DNA of 64,000 bases from IMGVR_UViG_3300020578_000006:62001-126000, one strand, 5' to 3'. Positions 2,798 through 62,883 are shown, numbered from the stretch's first letter. The notes: generated from the letters alone by a model not told the origin. Program-made: numbers and translations.

Positions 2798-3116
2798 TTA
2801 TTATTTTATAGGGCTCGGAGTAACTCTTACTGGTCTTTTAATTTGGTTTTATAGTCCTATTAAAATTACTATTGGTCAACTTTTGTTTGGTAAGTGTATA
2901 AATAGTGCGGAAGATTTTGATGTTGCAATAATGTTTAAATTTCCTATTTTAGGCAAACTACAAAGCTGTTATATATGCTCTTCATTCTGGCTCTCTTTGT
3001 TAATCGGCAGTCTTTTCACTCTTCTTTTTGGAATAAACTACAAATTTATTTTTTTGGCATGGTTTACATACCCGTCTATAGCTTATCTGTATAAGAAGTT
3101 TATAGATAATAAATAA
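2790..3116 (+). CDS. Small membrane protein, DUF1360-like
   Basis: Hydrophobic segments flanking LQSCYICSSFW (CxxCxxxW). Confidence 0.5.
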   Translation: MYSYYFIGLGVTLTGLLIWFYSPIKITIGQLLFGKCINSAEDFDVAIMFKFPILGKLQSCYICSSFWLSLLIGSLFTLLFGINYKFIFLAWFTYPSIAYLYKKFIDNK

Positions 3117-6801: not shown

Positions 6802-6822
6802 AATATTATATATTTATTGTAA

Positions 6823-11874: not shown

Positions 11875-11882
11875 TATAAATA
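11875..11882 (+). promoter_or_regulatory. Late promoter TATAAATA
   Basis: 8 nt before ATG 11891. Confidence 0.6.
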
Positions 11883-11890
11883 TTAAACAG

Positions 11891-13090
11891 ATGATTCCTG
11901 TTTTTAATACAAAGAGGTTGGAGGCCAACCATTTATATCCTACTTTATTTGGGTTTTCTACTAGAAATAAAGTAGCTGCTAATCTTTTAAACTATGTTTA
12001 CGGGGTTGTGATGGTGGTCGCAATGGCATTTGCATTCCATGCACTAAGTCTCATATTATCCGACTGGAATAAGATATTTGTTTTTCTTGCTAGTTTAGCT
12101 GTTGTAGGGTTGCCTTATTGTGTTAAGATTGTTTTGTTTGGTAACGAAAGATTTGAAGCAAAACACGCCTATCTGTGTTTGGCTATAAGCGTTTTGCCTG
12201 CTATTTTCGATTTTATAGGGTTTTATAGTGAAACAAGCATTAAGCAGACATTAACCCAGACAAAATTTGAAATTGTAGAGAAAATAAGTTACTTTAACAC
12301 TGAAGCTCGTGAAAAATTAGAACAGGAGAAGATTTCTCTACTACAAAAAAGAGATAAAGAACTCGCTGATATTAAATCCAAGTCAGCTCAAAAATTAACA
12401 CAACTTGAGGCTAGGTTGACCAACGCAAAGCAGACTTTTATAGATGAAACTGAAGGAGTTAAGGGGCAATATACAACTGGTAAAATCGGTAGCGGACCAA
12501 GAGCAAAGGAATATCAAGCAGAAATAAGAAAGACACAAGCTTCTAACGAACTAGAAGAAAGAAAAATTCTTCAGGAGCAAGAAATAGACGCAGAAACTAT
12601 TAATAATAAGTATCAGGCCCTAATAGATCAGTGTGATGCCGGTTTAAAAGAGATAGATACATTAGTTTCTAGTGATAATAAAGCAAAAGGACTTCTATAT
12701 CAAGTCAATAATGTAACTAACTTTTCAGATTTATCTAAAGTTACAATTACAGTTAATAATAGTATATCTAATATAAGCTCTAAGATGGGTCTTGAGCCTA
12801 AGTTTGTCTCTTATTCTACAGATGATGTAATACAGCTTTCATTTAGTGCTTTATTGCGTGGTGATATTACTGCATTAGTTTGCTTTTTGCTAGCAGTTCT
12901 CTTAGAAATGGTTGACATAGTTATTGTTTTTATGATAAGAGGTACTCGTAAATCTGAAATAGTTGAAATAAAAGAAGAAGAAAAGAACAAAATATTTTTT
13001 AAAAAATATGATTCTGAAATAAAATCAGAAAAAAATCCTCAAGCAATAGAGCAAATATTTCACCCCTACCAAAATTATACAAAACATTAA
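11891..13090 (+). CDS. Multi-TM coiled-coil membrane protein, DUF4407-like
   Basis: Start reassigned to ATG 11891 (after TATAAATA); N-terminal TMs, long coiled coil with GKIGSGPRA, C-terminal TM. Confidence 0.55.
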   Translation: MIPVFNTKRLEANHLYPTLFGFSTRNKVAANLLNYVYGVVMVVAMAFAFHALSLILSDWNKIFVFLASLAVVGLPYCVKIVLFGNERFEAKHAYLCLAISVLPAIFDFIGFYSETSIKQTLTQTKFEIVEKISYFNTEAREKLEQEKISLLQKRDKELADIKSKSAQKLTQLEARLTNAKQTFIDETEGVKGQYTTGKIGSGPRAKEYQAEIRKTQASNELEERKILQEQEIDAETINNKYQALIDQCDAGLKEIDTLVSSDNKAKGLLYQVNNVTNFSDLSKVTITVNNSISNISSKMGLEPKFVSYSTDDVIQLSFSALLRGDITALVCFLLAVLLEMVDIVIVFMIRGTRKSEIVEIKEEEKNKIFFKKYDSEIKSEKNPQAIEQIFHPYQNYTKH

Positions 13091-13114
13091 TTTTTGGGCC
13101 GTCTAGAACTAAGT

Positions 13115-13182
13115 ACTATTGAAGGCGTATTCAAATAGGGGTGGGAGGTGGGCTCGATAGCAATATCGGGACTATTTGAATA
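13115..13182 (+). other. GC-rich structured intergenic element
   Basis: 11-bp inverted repeat 13128-13138/13172-13182 enclosing GGG tracts and a CTCGATA-GCAA-TATCGGG hairpin. Confidence 0.55.
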
Positions 13183-13186
13183 AATA
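13181..13186 (+). promoter_or_regulatory. Late promoter core TAAATA
   Basis: 4 nt before GTG 13191. Confidence 0.65.
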
Positions 13187-13190
13187 ATAT

Positions 13191-13388
13191 GTGAGTAGCG
13201 GTACTGCTGTTCCGGAGTTATCAACTACCAGGCTGTATAGGCATTTTATGTTAATGCGTGATGAAATCTTAAAGCATAAATGGTATGAAAGTGAAAGATC
13301 TGGTTTTGATGTTGGGTTTGAATATGCTTTACTTGATTGGAATGTTAAATTTAAGCAAGCGTGGGATAAAACTAAGGACCCTTCTTAG
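13191..13388 (+). CDS. Small DUF4032-like protein
   Basis: EILKHKWYESERSGFDVGFEYALLDW matches the recalled DUF4032 motif. Confidence 0.7.
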   Translation: MSSGTAVPELSTTRLYRHFMLMRDEILKHKWYESERSGFDVGFEYALLDWNVKFKQAWDKTKDPS

Positions 13389-21329: not shown

Positions 21330-21335
21330 TATTTA
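21330..21335 (-). promoter_or_regulatory. Late promoter core TAAATA
   Basis: 5 nt before ATG 21324. Confidence 0.6.
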
Positions 21336-21357
21336 TTTAGTTTATATTAAATAATCT

Positions 21358-24249: not shown

Positions 24250-24280
24250 AATAAATAGCATCAAATTGCCGTAAAAATAA

Positions 24281-24286
24281 TAAATA
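24281..24286 (+). promoter_or_regulatory. Late promoter core TAAATA
   Basis: 4 nt before GTG 24291. Confidence 0.65.
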
Positions 24287-27980: not shown

Positions 27981-30900
27981 ATGGCAAACCCTACATTTAA
28001 CACATTAATAGCGCCTAATTCTGGTTTAATTTCTTTTAGTAATGATCCAACTGGTAGTTCTAATTTGCCTTCGCTTTCTAGTTCTGCACGTATTGTTTAT
28101 ACAGCAGGCGGTGGACTAACAATTACCAGTAAAGTCTCTTCAATGGAGAAATTTGCCGTTGAAGGTAGACTGGGTACTCTTTTTACTGTAACAGATGCTG
28201 TTTCCGGTGCTTTATTTCAACTTAGAGATGTTACTGGTTTTCCTATAGTAGAGTTTTTAGATAATGGTGACCTTGTAACCATAGGCAGTATAACCGCGGT
28301 TGAGGGTAATAGCCAGGAATGGAGCAGCGCATATACTACCGTAAAAGCAAATAGTGCTTCTTGGGAGGAATCTGCAGAGATAATACCCACTGTAACAAAT
28401 TATCTTTCCACTAACAATGTATTAATGTTATCTGCTACCATAATGGATTCATTAAGCGCAAGAGACTTGTTTTACATTAATCGCACTTTAATAAGAACCA
28501 ATAATCAAACTAACGTCTTCATTGGCAATAGTACTACAGGAAATGATAATGCCGAAGGCAATCATAATTTTGCATTTGGGTTAAGTGCAGGCAATGCATT
28601 GACCATCGGCGGTAGCAACAATTTCTTGGGGTACCAAGCTGGCCGTTGCAACTGCACAGGCAATGACAACAATTTCTTTGGGAGAGAAGCTGGCCGTTGC
28701 AACACCGCAGGCAATTTCAACAATTTCTTTGGGAGAGAAGCTGGCCTTTGCAACACCACAGGCAGTTACAACAATTTCTTGGGATTCCAAGCTGGCCGTT
28801 GCAACACCACAGGCACTCGCAACAATTTCTTGGGATACCAAGCTGGCCTTTGCAACACCACAGGCAATCGCAACAATTTCTTGGGATTTAATGCTGGCCG
28901 TAGCAACACCACAGGCACTTTCAACAATTTCATTGGATATGGAGCTGGTTTTTGCAACATCACAGGCCGTTACAACAATTTCTTGGGATACCAAGCTGGC
29001 CGTTGCAACACCACAGGCCGTTTCAACAATTTCTTTGGTAGACTTGCAGGATTCACTAACACCATTGGCTCCAACAATACCATCATTGGCAATAATGCTA
29101 ATGTGGCCACAAACAGCTTAAGTGGTGTTATAGTTTTGGGTACTGGGGCTATTGCCACTCAAACCAATCAAATCATACTTTCCAGTGCTGATATTTCCAT
29201 AAGAACCTTAAGAGGTACTGCTGCGGGACCCAACGTCTTCATTGGCAATAATACCACCGGAAATGATAATGCCACAGGCAATCATAATTTTGCATTTGGA
29301 TTGAGTGCAGGCAATGCATTAACGTCGGGGACCAGTAATGTATTTATTGGCAGTTGTGCAGGTAGAGTTAACACCACAGGCAATTTTAACAATTTCTTGG
29401 GAAATAATGCTGGCCGTTGCAACTGCACAGGCAGTTTCAACAATTTCTTGGGACCAAATGCTGGCTTTTGCAACACCACAGGCAGTGGCAACAATTTCTT
29501 GGGATTCCAGGCTGGCTATTGCAACTGCACAGGCAGTAGCAACAATTTCTTGGGATACAGAGCTGGATTTTTCAACACCACAGGCAGTTACAACAATTTC
29601 TTTGGACCAAATGCTGGCTTTTGCAACACCACAGGCAGTTGCAACAATTTCTTGGGAAATACTGCTGGCCGTAGCAACTGCACAGGCAGTAGCAACAATT
29701 TCTTGGGATATGGAGCTGGATTTTTCAACACCACAGGCAGTTACAACAATTTCTTTGGACCAAATGCTGGCCGTTGCAACTGCACAGGCAGTTTCAACAA
29801 TTTCTTGGGACCAAATGCTGGCTTTTGCAACACCACAGGCAGTGGCAACAATTTCTTGGGATTCCAGGCTGGCTATTGCAACTGCACAGGCAATGACAAC
29901 AATTTCTTAGGATTTAATGCTGGCCGTAACAACACCACAGGCAGTTACAACAATTTCTTGGGACGTAATGCTGGTCGTCGCAACACCACTGGGTGCGCTA
30001 ACCAAGTTTTAGGGAGCTTTGGACTTTATAACAACACCACTGGTTGTGGCAACATTGCTTTAGGACCGGTTGCTGGTTTCAATAATGAAACTGGTTGCTT
30101 CAATTTATTCTTAGGAGGAGCTACTGGTTTCTGTCATTTAAGTGGTAATAATAATATTTTTGTTGGTAATGCTGCAGGATTTAATGATAAAGTAGGTTTC
30201 AATAACACTATAATTGGGTTAAGTGCTGGCGTGGCCAGCGTGTCTGGTACAAACAACATTATAGTTGGCTCATTTGCCAATGTTAGCACTGGTACACTGT
30301 CTGGTGTTATAGTTTTGGGTACTGGTGCTGTTGCCACTCAATCTAATCAAATCATACTTTCCAGTGCTGATATTTCCATAAGAACTTTGAGAGGTACCAA
30401 TGCCGGTCCCAACGTCTTCATTGGCAATAGTACTACAGGAAATGATAATGCCACAGGCAATCATAATTTTGCATTTGGATTGAGTGCAGGCAATGCATTG
30501 ACCACCGGCGGTTATAACAATTTCTTAGGAAATAATGCTGGTCGTAACAACACCTCAGGCAGTTTCAACAATTTCATTGGGAGAGAAGCTGGCCGTTGCA
30601 ACTGCACAGGCAGTAACAACAATTTCTTGGGATTAAATGCTGGCCGTTGCAACACCACAGGCAGTCGCAACAATTTCTTGGGATACAATGCTGGCCGTTG
30701 CAACACCACAGGCTGTAGCAACAATTTCTTAGGATTTAATGCTGGCCGTAACAACACCATAGGCAGTTGCAACAATTTCTTGGGACAAGAGGCTGGCTAT
30801 GGCAACTGCACAGGCAGTAACAACAATTTCTTGGGATTAAATGCTGGCCTTTGCAACTGCACAGGCAATAGCAACAATTTCATTGGACCAAATGCTGGCC

Positions 30901-32177
30901 GTTTCAACTGCACAGGCAGTTTCAACAATTTCTTTGGATATAGTGCTGGCCGTTGCAACACCACAGGCGGTAACAACAATTTCTTGGGATATGGAGCTGG
31001 CCGTTTCAACTGCACAGGCGGTAACAACAATTTCTTTGGATTAGCTGCTGGTTATAACATAGGCAGGTATGGTGCAGCCAGCCGCAATGTATTCATAGGC
31101 CAAGAAGCTGGCAGAGGTGAATATGATTCTAGCTATACACCAACTAATGTTTTTGTTAACAATAACGTGGCCATTGGTTACCGGGCTGGATTCAAATTAA
31201 AAGCCCATACCTACAATACCAATTATCACTATGCCACCCAACACAACATATTCATTGGTGAAAAAGCCGGTTACAATAGCACCACCGATAATTCATATGG
31301 CGCCGCTATACACAATATATTTTTAGGAAAATTTTCTGGGTTTTACAACACCACAGGCAATAACAACAATTTCTTTGGGAGAGAAGCTGGCTTTTGCAAC
31401 ACCATAGGCAATCACAACAATTTCTTGGGATACCAAGCTGGCCGTTTTAACTGCACAGGCAGTCGCAACAATTTCTTTGGATTAAATGCTGGTCTTAGCA
31501 ACACCACAGGCAGTTACAACAATTTCTTGGGACAAGAGGCTGGCTTTAGCAACTGCACAGGCAATCACAACAATTTCTTGGGATTCCAGGCTGGCTTTAG
31601 CAACTGCACAGGTTGTAACAACAATTTCTTGGGTAGACTTGCAGGATGCACTAACACCATTGGCTCCAACAATACCATCATTGGCAATAATGCTAATGTG
31701 GCCACAAACAGCTTAAGTGGGGTAGTAGTATTCGGTACTGGTGCTGTTGCCACTCAATCTAATCAATTAGTAATCGGTTCTTTGTCTACCCCGTTAACCG
31801 GTAACAGTATATTATATGGTAACTTAACTGTAACAGATTACTTAAGTGCATCTAGGTATGCCGATAGTACTAATTGGTCTGGTAATAGAGAGCTAAAAAC
31901 AGTTAACTTTGATGCTGAACCATACCATCATTACCTTGTAGACACCACTTCTAGTGCAGTTATAGCAACATTACCTCTAAATCCGCAGATAGGCACAGTT
32001 ATACACTTCTCAGATAGGCTTTTAACGTTAAATTCTGGGTGGAACACCAATAATCTAATATTAAATAGAAATAGCATGATGATTCAAGGTTTGGCCGAAG
32101 ATTTAGTATGTGATAGGGCTGGAGTTACCTTCGCTCTCACGTATGTAGGCCATCCAATAGAGTGGAGAGTTGACTAA
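27981..32177 (+). CDS. Tail fiber/adhesin with Cys-rich 17-aa beta-roll repeats
   Basis: GxxNNFLGxxAGxCNTT repeats in three segments; C-terminal YLVDTT...TLPLNP...NNLILNRN module. Confidence 0.7.
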   Translation: MANPTFNTLIAPNSGLISFSNDPTGSSNLPSLSSSARIVYTAGGGLTITSKVSSMEKFAVEGRLGTLFTVTDAVSGALFQLRDVTGFPIVEFLDNGDLVTIGSITAVEGNSQEWSSAYTTVKANSASWEESAEIIPTVTNYLSTNNVLMLSATIMDSLSARDLFYINRTLIRTNNQTNVFIGNSTTGNDNAEGNHNFAFGLSAGNALTIGGSNNFLGYQAGRCNCTGNDNNFFGREAGRCNTAGNFNNFFGREAGLCNTTGSYNNFLGFQAGRCNTTGTRNNFLGYQAGLCNTTGNRNNFLGFNAGRSNTTGTFNNFIGYGAGFCNITGRYNNFLGYQAGRCNTTGRFNNFFGRLAGFTNTIGSNNTIIGNNANVATNSLSGVIVLGTGAIATQTNQIILSSADISIRTLRGTAAGPNVFIGNNTTGNDNATGNHNFAFGLSAGNALTSGTSNVFIGSCAGRVNTTGNFNNFLGNNAGRCNCTGSFNNFLGPNAGFCNTTGSGNNFLGFQAGYCNCTGSSNNFLGYRAGFFNTTGSYNNFFGPNAGFCNTTGSCNNFLGNTAGRSNCTGSSNNFLGYGAGFFNTTGSYNNFFGPNAGRCNCTGSFNNFLGPNAGFCNTTGSGNNFLGFQAGYCNCTGNDNNFLGFNAGRNNTTGSYNNFLGRNAGRRNTTGCANQVLGSFGLYNNTTGCGNIALGPVAGFNNETGCFNLFLGGATGFCHLSGNNNIFVGNAAGFNDKVGFNNTIIGLSAGVASVSGTNNIIVGSFANVSTGTLSGVIVLGTGAVATQSNQIILSSADISIRTLRGTNAGPNVFIGNSTTGNDNATGNHNFAFGLSAGNALTTGGYNNFLGNNAGRNNTSGSFNNFIGREAGRCNCTGSNNNFLGLNAGRCNTTGSRNNFLGYNAGRCNTTGCSNNFLGFNAGRNNTIGSCNNFLGQEAGYGNCTGSNNNFLGLNAGLCNCTGNSNNFIGPNAGRFNCTGSFNNFFGYSAGRCNTTGGNNNFLGYGAGRFNCTGGNNNFFGLAAGYNIGRYGAASRNVFIGQEAGRGEYDSSYTPTNVFVNNNVAIGYRAGFKLKAHTYNTNYHYATQHNIFIGEKAGYNSTTDNSYGAAIHNIFLGKFSGFYNTTGNNNNFFGREAGFCNTIGNHNNFLGYQAGRFNCTGSRNNFFGLNAGLSNTTGSYNNFLGQEAGFSNCTGNHNNFLGFQAGFSNCTGCNNNFLGRLAGCTNTIGSNNTIIGNNANVATNSLSGVVVFGTGAVATQSNQLVIGSLSTPLTGNSILYGNLTVTDYLSASRYADSTNWSGNRELKTVNFDAEPYHHYLVDTTSSAVIATLPLNPQIGTVIHFSDRLLTLNSGWNTNNLILNRNSMMIQGLAEDLVCDRAGVTFALTYVGHPIEWRVD
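28560..31670 (+). repeat. Coding 51-bp repeat arrays with higher-order segmental duplication
   Basis: 17-aa unit; exact 130-bp duplication 29406-29535 / 29763-29892; linker module repeated near 29060-29330 and 30300-30500. Confidence 0.9.
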
Positions 32178-33286
32178 TGAGTAATTTCTCTACATTGTTC
32201 TTTCCTGTATCAGTTACATTGACCAATTTTGAGTTTGATCAAAACTGGAATGATACATACAATTTAGTAAGATCGAGTAGCAGTAGTTGGAATAATGCAT
32301 ATACAAGTGTTAGTGCATTTAGTGGTACATCAATTACGGAAGGTATTACTGCTACCAATTTTACACAAACTACTAACTTTATACAGGTCTCTTCTAGAAA
32401 CCTTAATACCCCTGGTACCTATAATATTCCATTACCATCTAATTTTAGATTTTTAAAGATTCAAGCATTCGGCGGAGGCGGAGGCGGCGGGTCAGGTAGA
32501 AGATCATTAGGTAGTACTGCATCTATTGGAGGAGGTGGAGGAGGCGGAGGAGGTTATATTGATATCACTTACCCTATATCTATTCTTGGTAGTCTTAACG
32601 CAACAGTTGTAGTAGGGACTGGCGGTTCTGGTGCAACCGGAGTCTCTTCTAGTGCAAATGGTAGTGATGGTTCATCCGGAGGTTCCTCTTCTGTAACAGT
32701 TAATGCTGTTACCATTGCATTTGCTGCAGGTGGTAATGCAGGTAGAGGCGGAGGTACAAGTTCAGATTCACAAGCTGGAGGTGCCGGTGGTGGCAATACT
32801 ACAAATACTGCTGGTTTTCCTGGTACTGTAGGAGCTAGCTCAAATGGTATTGCAGGTTCTACTGGTTCATCCGGTGCCGATGATGCTTTTAATTCTGCTA
32901 TTGGAGCTGCAGGAGGGGCAGGAGGAGGTGGAGTCACTACAGGTCCTGGGTTTGCAACTAGAAGTTCAGGCGGAGCAGGTGGTATAGGAGGTTTTGCTAT
33001 AGCCGGAACTCATGTTTCTCGTGCCACAGGCGGTACAGGGTCAGGGGGAAATGCTAATAATGCTTCTGCAGTCTCGCAACCTTCCATGATGTTGTTAGGA
33101 GGTGGAGGTGGTGGTGGAGGAAGTGCATCTAATACTGCTATTAACGGGGGTAATGGGGGTACAGGTGCACAGCCTGGTGGAGGAGGTGGCGGTGGGGGAG
33201 CCTGTGGTACAGCATCAACTACTTTTTCAAGTGGTAACGGTGGTAACGGTGGTGATGGTTATGTTCGTTTATATTTCTTAAATTAA
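32177..33286 (+). CDS. Glycine-rich domain virion protein
   Basis: KIQAFGGGGGGGSG...GGGGGY, VVVGTGG, terminal GGDGYVRLYF. Confidence 0.7.
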   Translation: MSNFSTLFFPVSVTLTNFEFDQNWNDTYNLVRSSSSSWNNAYTSVSAFSGTSITEGITATNFTQTTNFIQVSSRNLNTPGTYNIPLPSNFRFLKIQAFGGGGGGGSGRRSLGSTASIGGGGGGGGGYIDITYPISILGSLNATVVVGTGGSGATGVSSSANGSDGSSGGSSSVTVNAVTIAFAAGGNAGRGGGTSSDSQAGGAGGGNTTNTAGFPGTVGASSNGIAGSTGSSGADDAFNSAIGAAGGAGGGGVTTGPGFATRSSGGAGGIGGFAIAGTHVSRATGGTGSGGNANNASAVSQPSMMLLGGGGGGGGSASNTAINGGNGGTGAQPGGGGGGGGACGTASTTFSSGNGGNGGDGYVRLYFLN

Positions 33287-33289
33287 TAT

Positions 33290-33324
33290 AAAAAATACAA
33301 GCCCTGAGGCTTGCGCCTCAGAGC
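33290..33324 (-). terminator. Rho-independent terminator
   Basis: Minus strand GCTCTGAGGC-GCAA-GCCTCAGGGC followed by TTGTATTTTTT. Confidence 0.8.
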
Positions 33325-33521
33325 CTGCATGACTTTAAAGCTTTCGCTTAAAAATCTGCTACACTGGGGAGAATTTAACACCCGAGAGCAAGCATGACCC
33401 CGGGTCTGACCCGAAGGCACTAGACAATATCAACTATTTACTCTAGTACTAATAGTGATATTTCTACATACTTCTCTATGTAGCCACCTAGAAATAGGCC
33501 TATAGGCTTCTCCCTAGATGC
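33290..33521 (-). ncRNA. Putative structured late non-coding RNA (~230 nt), family not recognised
   Basis: ORF-free; closing helix 33363-33373/33508-33517; internal hairpins; cUUCGg, GAAA and GCAA tetraloops only on minus strand; TATAAATA upstream, terminator downstream. Confidence 0.6.
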
Positions 33522-33526
33522 AATTA

Positions 33527-33534
33527 TATTTATA
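33527..33534 (-). promoter_or_regulatory. T4-type late promoter driving the putative ncRNA
   Basis: Perfect TATAAATA on minus strand, 5 nt before the first base of the predicted closing helix (33521). Confidence 0.65.
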
Positions 33535-33594
33535 TGAATATATTAAATATAAAGAGGTAAGGATGTACGGGCAATAGATGATACCGGTGAATTA

Positions 33595-34500
33595 TTATAT
33601 ATTTAATATATTTAATTGTTCAAACTGAGTAATTATTTCAGAATTATTAAATAGATTTACCATCTTATAGTCTGCCGGACACTGATGACCTTGGGTAAGC
33701 AAAGGGTAAGGATCCAGATAACTTTCAATGTTATCTGAACAGGGTACATTTGCTTTGAGGTTGGAATGCAATTCATAACCATATACAACTGAACTATTAC
33801 CAATCCAGAATACCAGGCTTTTCTTACCATAAGCTGCCATAGCATGTTGGACAAAGGAATCAATGCCAACAGCTCCTTTGCACTGAGACAACAACAACAA
33901 TATCTCTCTTAAAGACAAATCAACTTGTTGTACATTTTCCAAGGCAATTTGACCAGGGTTCTTAATCTGTACAAAATTAAATTTTTCAGAATATTTGTTC
34001 ACCAGTTCTTGAGCATACATAGGGGGCAAATCTCTAAACCAATTAAAATTAATATGGTTCTTCTTGTCTCCTATTCCACCATTAATTTGAATGGCAATTA
34101 CCGGTTTGTTATTATTTACAGTATTAAAAATAACTTGACTGTTTTGCTTTTCAATATTATTAAAATAAAGTTCAGGACTATTCTTATCAAATTCTAAATC
34201 CAAACTGTTGCACCATGCTTGAGCCAGACTACATTTTCTGTTAATAACATCATTACTGTTGTATGGTTCATGTTTGAATACTAAACTATCTTTGTCATGA
34301 ATAAAATCTTCATAAAAATATGGACACATCCCGGTTTTATACACCCGGTAAATATGGGGATTATGAAGAAAAACTTCTGGGTAAGGAGATACTACAATTA
34401 ATTTTCTATCTGGAAATGTTTTCTTGATATTGCGGACCACATTTGTGGCCACAATATTCTTACCTATTCCGCCTTCAATATGAAATATACTATACATCAT
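33595..34500 (-). CDS. Glycosyltransferase, GT9 (heptosyltransferase)-like
   Basis: Start reassigned to MMYS at 34500; FHIEGGIGKNIVAT, GIDSFVQHAMAAYGKKSLVFW. Confidence 0.7.
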   Translation of the reverse strand: MMYSIFHIEGGIGKNIVATNVVRNIKKTFPDRKLIVVSPYPEVFLHNPHIYRVYKTGMCPYFYEDFIHDKDSLVFKHEPYNSNDVINRKCSLAQAWCNSLDLEFDKNSPELYFNNIEKQNSQVIFNTVNNNKPVIAIQINGGIGDKKNHINFNWFRDLPPMYAQELVNKYSEKFNFVQIKNPGQIALENVQQVDLSLREILLLLSQCKGAVGIDSFVQHAMAAYGKKSLVFWIGNSSVVYGYELHSNLKANVPCSDNIESYLDPYPLLTQGHQCPADYKMVNLFNNSEIITQFEQLNILNI

Positions 34501-34738
34501 CTTTTTCTGGTGCAGGGAGGGAGTTAATCCTGTCTTTGGCACTAGAAACTGCAGTATTAAGAGTGGTTGTTTGCTCTTCAGTCAACACACTGGTATACTC
34601 TTCTTTCTCTAAGCACTGTTTAATATGATCTACGTTTGCTTGAAGAACCCTTCTACCAAGATTATCCTCTTTTTGCAAAGCTTGATTTATAGCATAAACA
34701 CTGTCAAATAATACTTCTACTTTAGTTCTTTTACTCAT
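34490..34738 (-). CDS. Small helical hypothetical protein
   Basis: ORF between sulfotransferase and GT9 genes, overlapping the GT9 start. Confidence 0.65.
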   Translation of the reverse strand: MSKRTKVEVLFDSVYAINQALQKEDNLGRRVLQANVDHIKQCLEKEEYTSVLTEEQTTTLNTAVSSAKDRINSLPAPEKDDV

Positions 34739-34759
34739 AATAATATATACTATCTTTAA

Positions 34760-35542
34760 TCAAAAATTAAAGTGGAAATTTGCAAACTGATCGTGTAAGT
34801 GACCTAATATTTCTTTACTATCATCTTTTACAGGCTTTATTTCTGGACGGATAGTATGAAGATCAGTAAACCCGTGTTCGGCATCATTTTCTTTTGTGTA
34901 TTGTTGTATATTGTTAAAATTATGTTCATAATAATTTTTATCTAAAAATTTGTATATTCCTTGTATGATACGTTTGGGAGTTTGAGTCAATTCATCAAAA
35001 TCTACAAAATAAAATTTATCCCGGTGCCCTCTCATGACCGCATCTCGGATGGTATTAAATGTACCGCCCACCAATCCCTCTTGACTGGTCCAGGTGTTAA
35101 TACGACCTTCTAACGTGCCTAAATTTGGCCCCGTTTCCATAGGACTGTTGATGAGTTTAATTTCTTTACGGTATAGTTTTTCCAAAGAAGAAAGAATACA
35201 GGTAATTTTGCGGGTGGTGGTTAAAATTTTAATAGGATAACCAAAGGCATTCTCTATTAATTCAATCAAAGTACTCCACCCTCTGCTTTTATTAAATACT
35301 ATAGGCCTGTCTGTATCAGAATGGTAACTCTGAAATAGATCTTTAATAATCTGTAACTGCTTTTCGGAAGTTTCCGATGCTTTAATAACCGGGTTTTGTT
35401 TCCAGAATTGATGAACACCCCGTACTAATTCACTTAACCCACTAGTGGGGGTAACATGAAAATCAGGGTTTTGTGCTAAAATATTGCAAAGCAACGTACT
35501 TCCTGAACGAGGCATGCCATTGATAAAATATATTTCTTTCAC
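34760..35542 (-). CDS. PAPS-dependent sulfotransferase family protein
   Basis: 5'-PSB loop FINGMPRSGSTLL, FNKSR, TTR...CILSS (3'-PB-like). Confidence 0.8.
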   Translation of the reverse strand: MKEIYFINGMPRSGSTLLCNILAQNPDFHVTPTSGLSELVRGVHQFWKQNPVIKASETSEKQLQIIKDLFQSYHSDTDRPIVFNKSRGWSTLIELIENAFGYPIKILTTTRKITCILSSLEKLYRKEIKLINSPMETGPNLGTLEGRINTWTSQEGLVGGTFNTIRDAVMRGHRDKFYFVDFDELTQTPKRIIQGIYKFLDKNYYEHNFNNIQQYTKENDAEHGFTDLHTIRPEIKPVKDDSKEILGHLHDQFANFHFNF

Positions 35543-35552
35543 TATGATATAT

Positions 35553-35580
35553 ATACTAATTTGTAAAAACGCATAATCAA
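35553..35580 (-). promoter_or_regulatory. Sigma70-like promoter of the sulfotransferase-GT9 operon
   Basis: TTGATT-N16-TAGTAT, 10 nt before GTG 35542. Confidence 0.6.
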
Positions 35581-35611
35581 CATTTATTTTTATGTTTAAT
35601 ATAATTATTGG

Positions 35612-35645
35612 AAATAAAAAAAAGAGGCCCTTTCGGGCCTCTTTT
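35612..35645 (-). terminator. Rho-independent terminator after gp23
   Basis: Minus strand AAAAGAGGCCC-GAAA-GGGCCTCTTTTTTTT. Confidence 0.9.
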
Positions 35646-35691
35646 AAACCAGGACATACTGGAAATTTTTTTTCGTCTACCGAGATTCGGA

Positions 35692-37167
35692 TTAGAAGTA
35701 CACAGACTGTGTGCCAGGCGTGAACGCTGTTCCGAGACCGCTCAACAGAATGGTGTGGTAGTACAGGTTAGCGCCAAAGATGTTGTCAACAACACCGTAG
35801 CGGGTCAAGAGACCAACACGGGGGCTGAAGTCATTGGGGCCAATTGTACGTTGTACCATAACCGGGATGTATGGGCAGTAGATGATACCAGTGTCATAAA
35901 ACTCTGGTCCCTTGTAGCCCAATAGGGCATACTCTACACGCGCATTACGTATTCCGCCCTCAAATTGGGCTTCTGTACGTGTATCACGGTATACGTTGAA
36001 ACGACCACCTAGGTTACCAACCTTAGCTACGCCAACAGGTTGAGTGTTGACATTGCCTTGGACTGGTACCCATTGAAACTCGGGAAGCATCTCGAGGATT
36101 GCGCAAACGCGAGGTGTTGCAACGATAAAGTTGGCAGCACCACGACGATTACGAACAGCAATTCTGTTGGCCTCGATGATCAGCCTCTGATAGAAGTCGC
36201 GATTGCGCTCTACCAGCCAGCGACCATCCGCGGAAGCGGGGGACCAGACAGAGTAGCCTGTGCCATGACCGGCGTTCAGCGAAACCTGGATCATACGAAC
36301 AATCATTTCACGGTCGATTTCGGCCTGTAGCTCATACGACATAGCGTTTGTGAGCTCAGTATCGATATCGATACCGTTCATGTTCTTAAGATCCTGTTCG
36401 AGTTCTACCGACCAGCGAGCAGCAAGTCTACGGGTACCGGCTTCTACGGCTGTTTTCTCAAAGGAAACTTCGATCTGAGGGATTTTGCCCGTCAGCTCAA
36501 AGTTCTTGAGAACTTGTGCAACACCCTGATCGACTCCTTTGAAGTCAAAGAGGGAAGCAGCAAGTCCATCGCCGCCAGAAAGCTTAGCACTCGATGTACC
36601 CGTATAACGGGTATCGAGGTACTGGTAACCAAGTTCCTTGCCAGCAGCTTGAGCTTGAGGATTGGTGAGATCGGAATCAGCACCGTTACCGGTGAGAGTA
36701 CCGTCAACACCGTCATTACCCAGTTGCTTGGCGAGATACTTGTAGCGTAGAGCAAAGGCTAGTCCTACTGGACCACCCATTGGCTGTACGCCTACAATTT
36801 CATTGGTGATTAGCTCGGGGAACGTTCTACGAATCATAGGGATGAGGATCTTAGGCAAGCGGGCATCGCCAGTTGCATACCAATCGCCTTGGGGGGAAGC
36901 GTTGCCAAAGGCACCACCTTGACCACCCAAACCAGCGGGGGAATATGCACCACCGAAAACCGAGCCTACACCACCGGCGACGTTACCCTCGTTGATGCAC
37001 CAAGCTTCTTGGTTTTCCAAGAGCATGGCTGTGTTCAAACGAGTGTGATCATCACCAATGGGCTTGACGTTATCGGATGTGTAATCCAGAACTGGCTTCC
37101 ACTTTTCCAATAGCGCCTTAGCGCGAGACTCATCAATATAAGCCGTTGTAGGTCTTATTGATTTCAT
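35692..37167 (-). CDS. gp23: Major capsid protein (T4 gp23-like)
   Basis: LLEKWKPVL, LLENQE, IRRTFPELITNEIVGVQPMGGPVGLAFALR, WSVELEQDLK..NGID, EIDRE, YCPYIP, TRYG. Confidence 0.97.
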   Translation of the reverse strand: MKSIRPTTAYIDESRAKALLEKWKPVLDYTSDNVKPIGDDHTRLNTAMLLENQEAWCINEGNVAGGVGSVFGGAYSPAGLGGQGGAFGNASPQGDWYATGDARLPKILIPMIRRTFPELITNEIVGVQPMGGPVGLAFALRYKYLAKQLGNDGVDGTLTGNGADSDLTNPQAQAAGKELGYQYLDTRYTGTSSAKLSGGDGLAASLFDFKGVDQGVAQVLKNFELTGKIPQIEVSFEKTAVEAGTRRLAARWSVELEQDLKNMNGIDIDTELTNAMSYELQAEIDREMIVRMIQVSLNAGHGTGYSVWSPASADGRWLVERNRDFYQRLIIEANRIAVRNRRGAANFIVATPRVCAILEMLPEFQWVPVQGNVNTQPVGVAKVGNLGGRFNVYRDTRTEAQFEGGIRNARVEYALLGYKGPEFYDTGIIYCPYIPVMVQRTIGPNDFSPRVGLLTRYGVVDNIFGANLYYHTILLSGLGTAFTPGTQSVYF

Positions 37168-37177
37168 AGTAATTTGT

Positions 37178-38994: not shown

Positions 38995-39000
38995 TATTTA
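38995..39000 (-). promoter_or_regulatory. Late promoter core TAAATA (gp21)
   Basis: 5 nt before ATG 38989. Confidence 0.65.
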
Positions 39001-39013
39001 TTGGTTTTTCTGC

Positions 39014-48642: not shown

Positions 48643-48648
48643 TATTTA
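48643..48648 (-). promoter_or_regulatory. Late promoter core TAAATA
   Basis: 4 nt before ATG 48638. Confidence 0.65.
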
Positions 48649-48654
48649 TCCGTA

Positions 48655-62875: not shown

Positions 62876-62883
62876 TATTTATA
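62876..62883 (-). promoter_or_regulatory. Late promoter TATAAATA (gp25-gp6 operon)
   Basis: 5 nt before ATG 62870. Confidence 0.7.

What the first reader, a model, noticed from the sequence alone, without database searches (positions are those of the whole stretch)
33290..33534. Unannotated, highly structured ~230-nt late non-coding RNA with its own promoter and terminator
Seen: ORF-free gap between converging genes, more GC-rich than its flanks. On the minus strand: TATAAATA (33534-33527); a 5' strand GCAUCUAGGGAGAA able to pair with UUCUCCCCAGUGU about 140 nt later; enclosed hairpins (33464-33483, 33426-33462, a cUUCGg loop at 33410-33417, a further stem near 33380-33405); then a GAAA-capped hairpin (33334-33353) and a GCAA-capped terminator with U-tract. 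Stable tetraloops occur only in this orientation. I do not recognise it as tRNA, tmRNA, RNase P, SRP, 6S or a known small ribozyme. Inference: an abundant late RNA, e.g. packaging/assembly RNA, protein sponge or anti-defence decoy.
Basis: partly seen in the sequence, partly recalled or inferred. Interest (0 to 1): 0.8.

Follow-up and report, generated by a model that had tools for sequence, protein, structure and literature searches.

The report
Orphan structured small RNA cassette
An uncultivated freshwater T4-like phage carries, next to a tail-fibre gene, a compact promoter-to-terminator unit that most likely makes a highly folded ~230-nt non-coding RNA of no known family. It looks real and conserved, but its job is unknown and only two versions of it could be found.

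Summary
A 308-nt ORF-free gap (33287-33594) holds, on the minus strand, an exact TATAAATA, about 230 nt of strongly folding sequence, a GAAA-capped hairpin, and a 16-bp GCAA-capped intrinsic terminator with a U-tract. Rfam and ARAGORN find nothing there.

Three new results support a stand-alone RNA gene:
- **Promoter signal:** ATAAATA behaves as a genuine promoter-type signal in this phage. Of 23 copies, 13 lie 3-20 nt before a real start codon, against 7.6% for permuted heptamers.
- **Independent variant:** One variant (L121) keeps the block from TATAAATA to the terminator. There its upstream neighbour is a different, divergently oriented gene, so the block cannot be a 3'UTR.
- **Conservation:** The RNA differs at 2.2% of positions. 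Third codon positions of the adjacent gene differ at 17.5%.

The weak points are as follows:
- There are only two variants and no compensatory base changes.
- No expression data exist.
- The core folds about equally well on either strand.
- Recent recombination could explain the low divergence.

The function is unknown. My best guess is a protein-binding structured RNA carried as a mobile, moron-like cassette. It is a new, orphan family of a known general kind.

The parts
33527..33534 (-). TATAAATA, an exact match to the T4 late-promoter core. The predicted transcription start is about 33521.
   Evidence: One search gives the position. In some searches, 13 of 23 ATAAATA copies in the window lie 3-20 nt upstream of an ATG/GTG that opens an ORF of at least 50 codons, against 85 of 1117 for permuted heptamers (p = 3.6e-9). 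The motif is conserved in L121, while the 41 nt upstream of it are only 66% alike. The start position is inferred from the known geometry of T4 late promoters, not measured.
33290..33521 (-). Predicted primary transcript of about 232 nt. In the MFE, 178 nt are paired (89 pairs, 11 of them G.U).
   Evidence: The variant L121:554-772(-) folds the same way, with z = -6.66.
33485..33520 (-). 5' hairpin P1: a 10-bp stem (CAUCUAGGGA / UUUCUAGGUG) with an apical GCC-loop-GGC. The loop is UAUA here and GAAA in L121.
   Evidence: One search gives helix coordinates and a pair probability of 0.99 in both variants. Searches show that both loop substitutions fall on unpaired positions.
33358..33484 (-). 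Multi-branch domain closed by the 7-bp helix GCUACAU/GUGUAGC (33484-33478 / 33364-33358).
   Evidence: One search gives a pair probability of 0.99 in both variants. One search gives the RNAalifold consensus. The internal arrangement differs slightly between the two MFEs.
33421..33466 (-). Long AU-rich hairpin (19 bp in four segments, UAGA apical loop), identical in both variants.
33397..33418 (-). Short arm GCCU/GGGU. In the window it carries an extra 12-nt hairpin (33401-33412, GGGUCAGACCCG) that is absent from L121.
   Evidence: The indel removes exactly one small hairpin and is flanked by a GGGUC direct repeat.
33367..33383 (-). Small hairpin GGG.G / C.CCC with the conserved 7-nt loop UUAAAUU. 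It contains the C-rich strand UUCUCCC, which can also pair with two G-rich strands elsewhere in the RNA.
33331..33356 (-). GAAA-capped hairpin in an A/U-rich context.
   Evidence: Its outermost G-C pair is lost in L121: the G changes to C and the partner C is deleted.
33290..33330 (-). Intrinsic terminator: a 16-bp stem (33330-33295) capped by GCAA, followed by a U run.
   Evidence: calls it only on the minus strand. It is 100% identical in L121.
32177..33286 (+). Convergent neighbour, a 369-aa glycine-rich tail protein gene. It is the only gene linked to the RNA in both variants.
   Evidence: PHROG minor tail protein families. (Pfam Gly_rich_2). (L121 carries the 3' 550 nt at 92.7% identity).

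Best explanation
This is a stand-alone small RNA gene carried as a 'moron'-like cassette in the variable tail-fibre and surface-modification island of a freshwater T4-like phage. A T4-late-type promoter (TATAAATA, 33534-33527, minus strand) starts transcription near 33521. The RNA of about 232 nt folds into a 5' hairpin, a closed multi-branch domain and a GAAA-capped hairpin. It ends at a strong intrinsic terminator at about 33290, just short of the stop codon of the convergent tail-protein gene.

**Shown:**
- the sequence anatomy;
- the minus-strand asymmetry;
- the behaviour of ATAAATA as a promoter-type signal in this genome;
- conservation of the promoter-to-terminator block in a second lineage with a different upstream gene;
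- the absence of a conserved ORF;
- the absence of any match to a known family.

**Inferred:**
- that the block is transcribed as a discrete RNA;
- that expression is late;
- that the RNA acts in trans.

**Mechanism I commit to (low confidence):** it works as a folded, protein-binding RNA (scaffold or decoy) rather than as a seed-pairing sRNA. About 77% of its bases are paired, and its 5' end is immediately locked in a hairpin. The hairpin loops are either variable between the two variants (UAUA in one, GAAA in the other) or are structural tetraloops, so they are poor candidates for conserved base-pairing seeds.
For: - **Anatomy and fold statistics:**
- **Strand:** the minus strand folds at -95.4 kcal/mol against -68.8 for the plus strand, with z = -7.33 against -4.5. 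The model has 11 G.U pairs. The A-to-G change in L121 turns an A-U pair into G.U on the minus strand and would be a C.A mismatch on the plus strand. The terminator is called on the minus strand only.
- **Promoter:** 13 of 23 ATAAATA copies precede a start codon, against 7.6% for permuted controls, p = 3.6e-9. The genes preceded include the head maturation protease, a tail collar protein and a tail fibre gene. The T4 late promoter is TATAAAT(A), as used in PMC3037559.
- **Independence from the upstream gene:** in L121 the upstream neighbour is a 370-aa ORF on the opposite strand with its own ATAAATA-N5-ATG, back to back with the RNA's TATAAATA.
- **Conservation:** 5 substitutions in 224 aligned nt, against 32 in 183 third codon positions of the adjacent gene, p = 9e-8. 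Similarity collapses to 66% immediately upstream of TATAAATA.
- **Differences from L121:** four of the five substitutions and the 12-nt indel are compatible with the fold predicted from the window sequence alone.
- **Not coding:** the 45-aa ORF is frameshifted in L121, and the 7-codon ORF after the promoter is not conserved.
- **Cassette behaviour:** relatives that share one or other flanking gene lack the element (L088, L141, L144).
Against: - **No expression evidence.** No RNA run was listed for the element. Four metatranscriptomes gave zero depth on 32200-35540, but these hold relatives of the phage, not this phage, so the result is uninformative.
- **Too few sequences.** Only two distinct variants exist, and 0 of 83 predicted pairs show a compensatory double change.
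- **Weak substitution test.** Random substitutions keep all pairs 38% of the time, so 4-5 compatible changes out of 5 gives a p-value of roughly 0.01-0.07.
- **Core not strand-specific.** Without the 3' hairpins, the core folds about equally well on both strands.
- **Possible recombination tract.** The low-divergence block extends 54 nt into the tail gene with 0 mismatches. This fits a recently exchanged tract as well as it fits selection.
- **TATAAATA not enriched.** The full octamer occurs 7 times against 13.8 expected.
- **Mechanism untested.** The protein-binding mechanism is inferred from architecture only.
Confidence: 0.5

Rival explanations
1. The element acts in cis as a 3'-end module. 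The hairpins serve as a terminator or insulator between convergent (or, in L121, tandem) transcription units, and as a 3' stabiliser of flanking mRNAs. No trans-acting RNA product matters.
For: The element sits exactly between transcription units and ends in a very strong hairpin adjacent to the tail gene's stop codon. In both variants it is linked to the tail protein gene. In the window there is no terminator between the 315-aa ORF and the element, so read-through would include it.
Against: A terminator needs about 40 nt, not 230 nt of conserved multi-helix structure. All stabilising features (G.U pairs, tetraloops, U-tract) are on the strand opposite to the tail gene. In L121 no same-strand gene lies upstream, yet TATAAATA is retained. 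Relatives L088, L141 and L144 manage without the element.
Confidence: 0.2
2. The element is a recently exchanged mosaic segment, or the relic of a mobile cassette, with no current function. Its low divergence reflects recent recombination rather than selection. Its structure is that of terminators plus fortuitous hairpins.
For: The region downstream of gp23 is hypervariable among close relatives. The upstream junction lies right at the AT-rich promoter. The low-divergence tract runs 54 nt into the tail gene. AT-rich inverted repeats flank the element (I1, 25 nt at 84%). The element was found in only two lineages.
Against: The segment is not a very recent copy: it has accumulated 5 substitutions and 2 indels, and these avoid helix interiors. 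The fold z-scores are extreme in both variants. The exact promoter core and the whole terminator are retained. The flanking inverted repeat is low-complexity AT sequence and is not kept in L121.
Confidence: 0.15
3. The element functions at the DNA level, for example as a replication origin, a recombination hotspot or an array of protein-binding sites (four CTAG-containing motifs), and not through an RNA product.
For: The core folds about equally well on both strands. CTAG occurs four times within 170 nt, as the sequence shows. The whole sequence is conserved, not just its pairing potential.
Against: The 27 kcal/mol strand asymmetry, the G.U pairs, the GNRA and UUCG loops and the U-tract have no meaning for duplex DNA. 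A loop change from UAUA to GAAA and a cleanly excised hairpin are typical of RNA evolution.
Confidence: 0.06
4. The element encodes a small protein, or it is a diverged member of a known RNA family that the searches missed.
For: A 45-aa GTG ORF lies at 33283-33420 on the minus strand. Single-sequence searches can miss remote RNA homology.
Against: The ORF runs through the terminator and is frameshifted in L121. No start codon follows the promoter at the usual 4-18 nt. Rfam found nothing at gathering thresholds and only chance-level hits at E up to 10. ARAGORN found nothing. A model of the core does not match T4 rnaC or rnaD.
Confidence: 0.04

Closest known systems
Phage 'morons' (promoter-gene-terminator cassettes inserted between conserved genes, described in lambdoid phages)
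   Same: The unit is autonomous, with its own promoter and its own intrinsic terminator. It sits between unrelated genes in a mosaic region, and it is present or absent among close relatives.
   Different: The payload appears to be a structured non-coding RNA, not a protein. The promoter is of the phage's own T4-late type rather than a host sigma-70 promoter active in lysogens. The phage is a T4-like, presumably lytic, phage.
T4 stable RNAs rnaC and rnaD (species 1 and 2 RNAs, function unknown)
   Same: They are small, stable, structured RNAs of unknown function encoded by a T4-type phage.
   Different: The T4 RNAs lie in the tRNA cluster. By established knowledge, which I did not test, they are processed from tRNA precursor transcripts. 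They are 139 and 119 nt long. A covariance model of the present core finds no similarity to them. The present element has its own promoter and terminator, and the window has no tRNA genes.
Terminator-bearing bacterial and phage trans-acting sRNAs (Hfq-type architecture)
   Same: The element is a stand-alone gene with a Rho-independent terminator, a U tail and an A/U-rich stretch upstream of the terminator hairpins.
   Different: It is longer (about 232 nt) and far more base-paired. It has no obvious accessible conserved seed, and its 5' end is sequestered in a hairpin. The host, and whether it has Hfq, are unknown.
   Same: They are phage- or host-encoded RNAs of about 170-190 nt that work by binding a protein machine.
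   Different: There was no hit to any Rfam family at gathering thresholds, and neither pRNA nor 6S appears among the chance-level hits. The fold has no 6S-like large central bubble. T4-type packaging motors are not known to use an RNA, which is background knowledge rather than a test.

Membership tests
Any Rfam 15 family (including tRNA-like, tmRNA, RNase P, SRP, 6S, pRNA, self-cleaving ribozymes, riboswitches and the large phage-associated RNAs) | Covariance-model score at or above the family's gathering threshold | tested here: not met
   One search found 0 matches in the whole window. In one search, the permissive search of 33000-33900 gave only sub-threshold chance hits. The best by E-value matched the terminator hairpin alone (IsrM, 18.4 bits against a gathering score of 376).
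tRNA / tmRNA | Cloverleaf or tRNA-like domain detectable by ARAGORN | tested here: not met
   One search found no tRNA or tmRNA gene in the window.
T4 rnaC / rnaD stable RNAs | Sequence and structure similarity to T4 rnaC or rnaD, and a location in a tRNA gene cluster | tested here: not met
   In one search, model R1 run with filters off on T4 68000-76000 gave no hit overlapping rnaC or rnaD (all hits at most 4.8 bits, E above 1). One search found no tRNA genes nearby.
T4-type late transcription unit | TATAAATA core promoter at the 5' end | tested here: met
   One search shows an exact match at 33534-33527(-). Searches show that the ATAAATA core is tied to gene starts in this genome (13 of 23 against 7.6% for controls). 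It is conserved in L121.
T4-type late transcription unit | Late-sigma (gp55-type) dependent initiation at late times | not testable with these tools
   No expression data are available. I did not look for a gp55 homolog outside the few ORFs scanned.
Intrinsic (Rho-independent) terminator | GC-rich hairpin immediately followed by a U-tract on the transcribed strand | tested here: met
   One search found a 16-bp stem with 8 G-C pairs and a GCAA loop, followed by a T-rich tail, on the minus strand only.
Moron-type autonomous cassette | Own promoter plus own terminator, with presence/absence polymorphism between otherwise related genomes | tested here: met
   (promoter and terminator). (L088 lacks it next to a 92%-identical flanking gene). 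(L141 has a 46-nt spacer instead). (L144 lacks it).
Structured functional RNA (general) | Base pairs maintained by compensatory substitutions across homologs | tested here: inconclusive
   One search used two sequences and found 0 of 83 pairs with a double change. In one search, 4 of 5 substitutions and the 12-nt indel are structure-compatible, and one terminal pair is lost.
CsrB/Rsm-type protein sponge | Multiple conserved GGA motifs exposed in hairpin loops | tested here: not met
   The GGA of GGGAGAA lies inside the P1 stem (probability 0.99). The second site reads AGAGAAG in the window and GGAGAAG only in L121.
Type III antitoxin (ToxI-like) or CRISPR-like repeat RNA | Tandem direct repeats | tested here: not met
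   One search found no tandem or multi-copy direct repeats within 33200-33650, only short two-copy chance families.
Hfq-type trans-acting sRNA | Accessible conserved seed and Hfq binding | not testable with these tools
   The 3' module looks compatible. No obvious single-stranded conserved seed is visible in the predicted fold. Host and targets are unknown.

The most novel reading that the evidence does not exclude
This is the founding member of a new class of mobile 'RNA morons'. On this reading, autonomously transcribed, compactly folded non-coding RNAs travel with tail-fibre or host-range modules of freshwater T4-like phages. They act late in infection by binding a host or phage protein, for example as an anti-defence decoy or an assembly cofactor.
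Probability: 0.15. Interest if true: 0.7.

Novelty: new member of a known kind. Interest (0 to 1): 0.45.

Why it matters
Few phage-encoded structured RNAs that have their own promoter and terminator have a known function. Those that do (pRNA, anti-CRISPR and antitoxin RNAs, regulatory sRNAs) revealed new biology. T4-like phages are abundant in lakes and oceans. A conserved RNA cassette next to a tail-fibre gene would be a new, testable type of accessory element in them.

The practical value is limited for now. The phage is uncultivated, its host is unknown, and only two variants exist. The finding is therefore a well-defined candidate, with coordinates, a fold and a covariance model, rather than an explained system.

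Tried and rejected
**Known RNA families**
- Rfam on the whole window at gathering thresholds found nothing, and on 33000-33900 at E up to 10 it gave only chance hits.
- ARAGORN found nothing.

**Sequence homolog searches**
- blastn against GenBank phages found no match.
- blastn and nhmmer against 84 related loci found only 100% identical copies from the same phage population.
- Four exact-pattern scans of viral contigs found only identical copies plus chance hits. The 15-mer used later proved to lie in the variable 12-nt insertion.
- A gapped-pattern scan of metagenome contigs gave one true variant (L121) and one identical copy among 21 hits.
- An 18-mer scan of 185,579 bacterial and archaeal genomes gave one chance hit in a coding sequence.
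- Covariance model R1 of the core found only the window and L121 across 0.96 Mb of related phage loci. It found nothing in L144 or L146-L149, no paralog in the window with filters off, and no match to T4 rnaC or rnaD.

**Synteny routes through flanking genes**
- The gp23 neighbourhoods of 80 relatives lose homology about 80 nt downstream of gp23, near window position 35612.
- The 315-aa ORF has a 92%-identical relative in L088, which lacks the element.
- The glycine-rich tail protein gave only identical copies.
- The 370-aa ORF of L121 led to L144, which has no element.

**Protein-database routes to more variants**
- All three searches failed. They were swamped by low-complexity glycine runs or found only distant N-terminal relatives.
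- The contexts of those relatives (L137-L142) lack the element.

**Expression**
- No RNA run was listed for the element.
- Four metatranscriptomes cover only gp23 of related phages.

**Hypotheses rejected**
- **Small protein gene:** the ORF is frameshifted in L121.
- **3'UTR only:** the L121 context rules it out.
- **Csr-type sponge, ToxI-like repeats and a 6S-like rod:** none fits the fold or the repeat analysis.
- **MITE with terminal inverted repeats:** the arms are low-complexity AT sequence and are not conserved in L121.
its probability is 0.004 or less.

**Checked and set aside**
- The gap at 13091-13371 as a possible second RNA is not structured (z = -0.18) and holds a 65-aa ORF behind an ATAAATA.

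Full report
**Context.** The window is part of IMG/VR contig 3300020578_000006 (229.7 kb), and the DNA runs that hold it are lake-water metagenomes. It belongs to a T4-like phage. The major capsid protein at 35692-37167(-) matches Pfam Gp23 at 2.6e-89. Its best cultured relatives are cyanomyophages at about 34% amino-acid identity.

The finding lies in a 308-nt gap (33287-33594). On one side is a 369-aa glycine-rich tail protein gene on the plus strand (PHROG minor-tail families, Pfam Gly_rich_2). On the other is a 315-aa ORF on the minus strand, whose few relatives are annotated as glycosyltransferase/tail fibre in pelagiphages. Among close relatives, homology stops about 80 nt downstream of gp23 (near window position 35612), and beyond that point the gene content differs. 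The whole stretch downstream of gp23 is therefore a variable island.

**Observation.**
- TATAAATA is at 33534-33527(-).
- The hairpins lie at or within 1-2 nt of the stated coordinates.
- There is a GAAA-capped hairpin at 33356-33331.
- There is a 16-bp GCAA-capped stem at 33330-33295 followed by a U run. The scanner calls it a terminator on the minus strand only.
- The gap holds only trivial ORFs.

The 245-nt stretch folds at -95.4 kcal/mol with z = -7.33 on the minus strand. The plus strand gives -68.8 kcal/mol and z = -4.5. In a 170-nt sliding scan of all 64 kb, this is the strongest minus-strand outlier. With the two 3' hairpins removed, the core still gives z = -2.95, and 0 of 200 shuffles fold as well.

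Two qualifications apply. The plus-strand core gives z = -3.44, so the core alone does not choose a strand. GC content (0.44) is higher than that of the right flank (0.33) and the window mean (0.36), but not higher than that of the glycine-rich gene (0.45).

**Which strand.** The minus strand is favoured for four reasons:
- a 27 kcal/mol energy difference between the strands;
- 11 G.U pairs in the model, which would be A.C mismatches on the plus strand;
- the UUCG, GAAA and GCAA loops;
- the U-tract after the terminator.

**Known families.** Rfam 15 gives no match at gathering thresholds anywhere in the window. In permissive mode around the element it gives only chance-level hits; the best by E-value is just the terminator hairpin. 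ARAGORN finds no tRNA or tmRNA. A covariance model of the core (R1) finds nothing resembling T4 rnaC or rnaD and no paralog in the window.

**Promoter.** The full octamer TATAAATA is not enriched (7 copies against 13.8 expected). Its core ATAAATA, however, is strikingly position-specific in this genome. Of 23 copies, 13 are followed within 3-20 nt by an ATG or GTG that opens an ORF of at least 50 codons. For the 20 permuted heptamers of the same composition the figure is 85 of 1117 (Fisher p = 3.6e-9). ATAAATA is also rarer than its permutations, at 23 copies against about 56 on average.

The genes it precedes include the head maturation protease, a tail collar protein and a tail fibre gene, and also nrdA. 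TATAAAT(A) is the T4 late-promoter sequence, as used for example in PMC3037559. The copy in front of the element is followed by no ORF: a TTG, seven codons and a stop, and this mini-ORF is not conserved in L121.

**Homologs.** Finding homologs was hard. The RNA sequence occurs as 100% identical copies in three other IMG/VR contigs of the same phage population and in one metagenome contig, L134. A fourth IMG/VR contig (L113) carries the identical tail-protein gene but ends before the RNA. A gapped-pattern scan of metagenome contigs gave one true variant, L121 (Ga0172363_10073086, 2445 bp). No other search found anything:
- four pattern scans of viral contigs;
- one scan of genome contigs;
- synteny searches through all three flanking genes;
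- three protein searches;
- covariance-model searches over about 1 Mb of related loci.

**What L121 shows.**

*Context.* L121 keeps the tail-protein gene on the 3' side. Upstream of the RNA, however, lies a different gene on the opposite strand. It is a 370-aa ORF, 38% identical to the window's ORF at 11891-13090 and 79% identical to an ORF in L141. This ORF has its own ATAAATA-N5-ATG, placed back to back with the RNA's TATAAATA. In L121, therefore, the element cannot be the 3'UTR of an upstream same-strand gene. If it is transcribed, it is transcribed from its own promoter.

*Conservation.* The block from TATAAATA to the terminator has 5 substitutions in 224 aligned nt (2.2%), plus a 12-nt and a 1-nt indel. 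The adjacent 550 nt of coding sequence have 40 mismatches, 32 of them at third codon positions (17.5% of those positions). The RNA against third positions gives p = 9e-8. Immediately upstream of TATAAATA, similarity falls to 66%.

*Nature of the differences.* I judged the differences against the fold predicted from the window sequence alone:
- Two substitutions lie in the apical loop of P1 (UAUA to GAAA).
- One converts an A-U pair to G.U.
- One lies at an unpaired position.
- The 12-nt indel removes exactly one small hairpin and is flanked by a GGGUC repeat.
- The last substitution, together with the 1-nt deletion, removes the outermost pair of the GAAA hairpin.

This pattern is what a structured RNA would show, but the statistics are weak. 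Random substitutions preserve all pairs 38% of the time, so the p-value is roughly 0.01-0.07. No pair shows a compensatory double change.

*Coding potential.* The 45-aa ORF is frameshifted in L121, so it is not a gene.

**Fold.** In both variants the thermodynamic ensemble contains, with probability 0.99, the 5' hairpin P1 (33520-33485) and a 7-bp helix (33484-33478 / 33364-33358) that closes a multi-branch domain. That domain holds a long AU-rich hairpin (33466-33421), a short variable arm (33418-33397) and a small hairpin with a UUAAAUU loop. The GAAA hairpin and the terminator follow.

In the isolated core it costs 2.9 kcal/mol relative to the MFE. The C-rich strand UUCUCCC can pair with three different G-rich strands, and the MFEs of the two variants differ in which one they use. 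The interior of the domain therefore remains unresolved.

**Cassette behaviour.** Relatives that share a flanking gene lack the element:
- L088 has the 315-aa ORF at 92% identity, but the region downstream of it is unrelated and unstructured (z = +0.49).
- L141 has a tail gene, a 46-nt spacer and then the 368-aa ORF.
- L144 lacks it as well.

The element thus behaves like an autonomous insertion, a 'moron' whose payload is an RNA.

**Expression.** This is untested. No RNA run was listed for the element. Logan contigs from four freshwater or aquaculture metatranscriptomes align only to gp23, at 85-95% identity, so they come from related phages. They give zero depth over 32200-35540. This is no evidence either way.

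**Interpretation.** I think the most likely reading is a stand-alone, minus-strand, structured RNA gene of about 232 nt (confidence about 0.5). The mechanism can only be inferred from architecture. About 77% of the bases are paired, the 5' end is locked in a hairpin, and the loops are either variable between the two variants or structural tetraloops. I therefore favour a folded, protein-binding RNA over a seed-pairing sRNA.

The main rivals are:
- **A purely cis-acting terminator/insulator module (0.2).** The size of the element, its strand and the L121 context argue against this.
- **A recently exchanged, functionless mosaic segment (0.15).** The low-divergence tract continues 54 nt into the tail gene with no mismatch, which fits recombination as well as it fits selection.
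- **A DNA-level element (0.06).**
- **A small protein gene or a missed known RNA family (0.04).**

**Novelty.** The sequence belongs to no described RNA family, but the general kind (a phage-encoded small RNA with its own promoter and terminator) is known. It is a well-delimited orphan candidate, of moderate interest until expression data or more homologs are available.

Noticed in passing
window-wide, e.g. 3109-3115(+), 6811-6817(-), 11876-11882(+), 21330-21336(-), 24280-24286(+), 38995-39001(-), 48643-48649(-), 62876-62882(-): ATAAATA sits only 4-18 nt upstream of many start codons, usually with no Shine-Dalgarno sequence between them, and it is depleted elsewhere in the window. This suggests that many of the phage's T4-late-type transcripts are leaderless or have very short leaders.
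   Followed up: partly
window 33600-35620, and loci L002-L004, L088, L141, L144: The region downstream of the capsid gene gp23 is a hypervariable island. In the window it holds a sulfotransferase (34760-35542, Pfam Sulfotransfer_3) and a 315-aa glycosyltransferase-like ORF. Relatives with 92-96% identical gp23 carry entirely different genes there.
   Followed up: partly
window 28616-31633 (inside the 1398-aa gene 27981-32177): The large virion/tail-spike-like protein contains four arrays of a 51-nt (17-aa) tandem repeat, about 37 copies in all at roughly 80% identity.
   Followed up: no
L121 779-801: Two promoter cores lie back to back. TATAAATA on one strand drives the RNA. About 8 nt away on the other strand, ATAAATA-N5-ATG drives the 370-aa ORF. 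A 12-nt palindrome, TATTTATAAATA, lies within this stretch. Such AT-rich promoter cores may be the recombination junctions that shuffle cassettes.
   Followed up: partly
window 33268-33292 and 33529-33553: A 25-nt AT-rich inverted repeat (84% complementary) brackets the element. It is low-complexity sequence, the right arm is not conserved in L121, and it is probably chance rather than a transposon end.
   Followed up: partly
window 35610-35650: A strong hairpin (GAGGCCC-TTTCG-GGCCTC) lies just downstream of gp23, flanked by an A run and a T run. It looks like a bidirectional terminator. It is also where homology with relatives ends.
   Followed up: no
window 35700-37170 (gp23): Freshwater, aquaculture and outdoor metatranscriptomes contain contigs 85-99% identical to this capsid gene. 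Relatives of this phage are therefore actively expressed in several environments.
   Followed up: partly
window 11891-13090(+), L121 807-1919, L141 2439-3545, L144 825-1940: A conserved protein of about 370-400 aa with no Pfam or PHROG match recurs next to tail genes in these phages. It appears to have hydrophobic N- and C-terminal segments around a long charged central region.
   Followed up: no
window 13091-13371: A second gap between convergent genes is not structured (z = -0.18). It contains an ATAAATA followed by a 65-aa GTG ORF (13191-13388), probably an unlisted small gene.
   Followed up: partly
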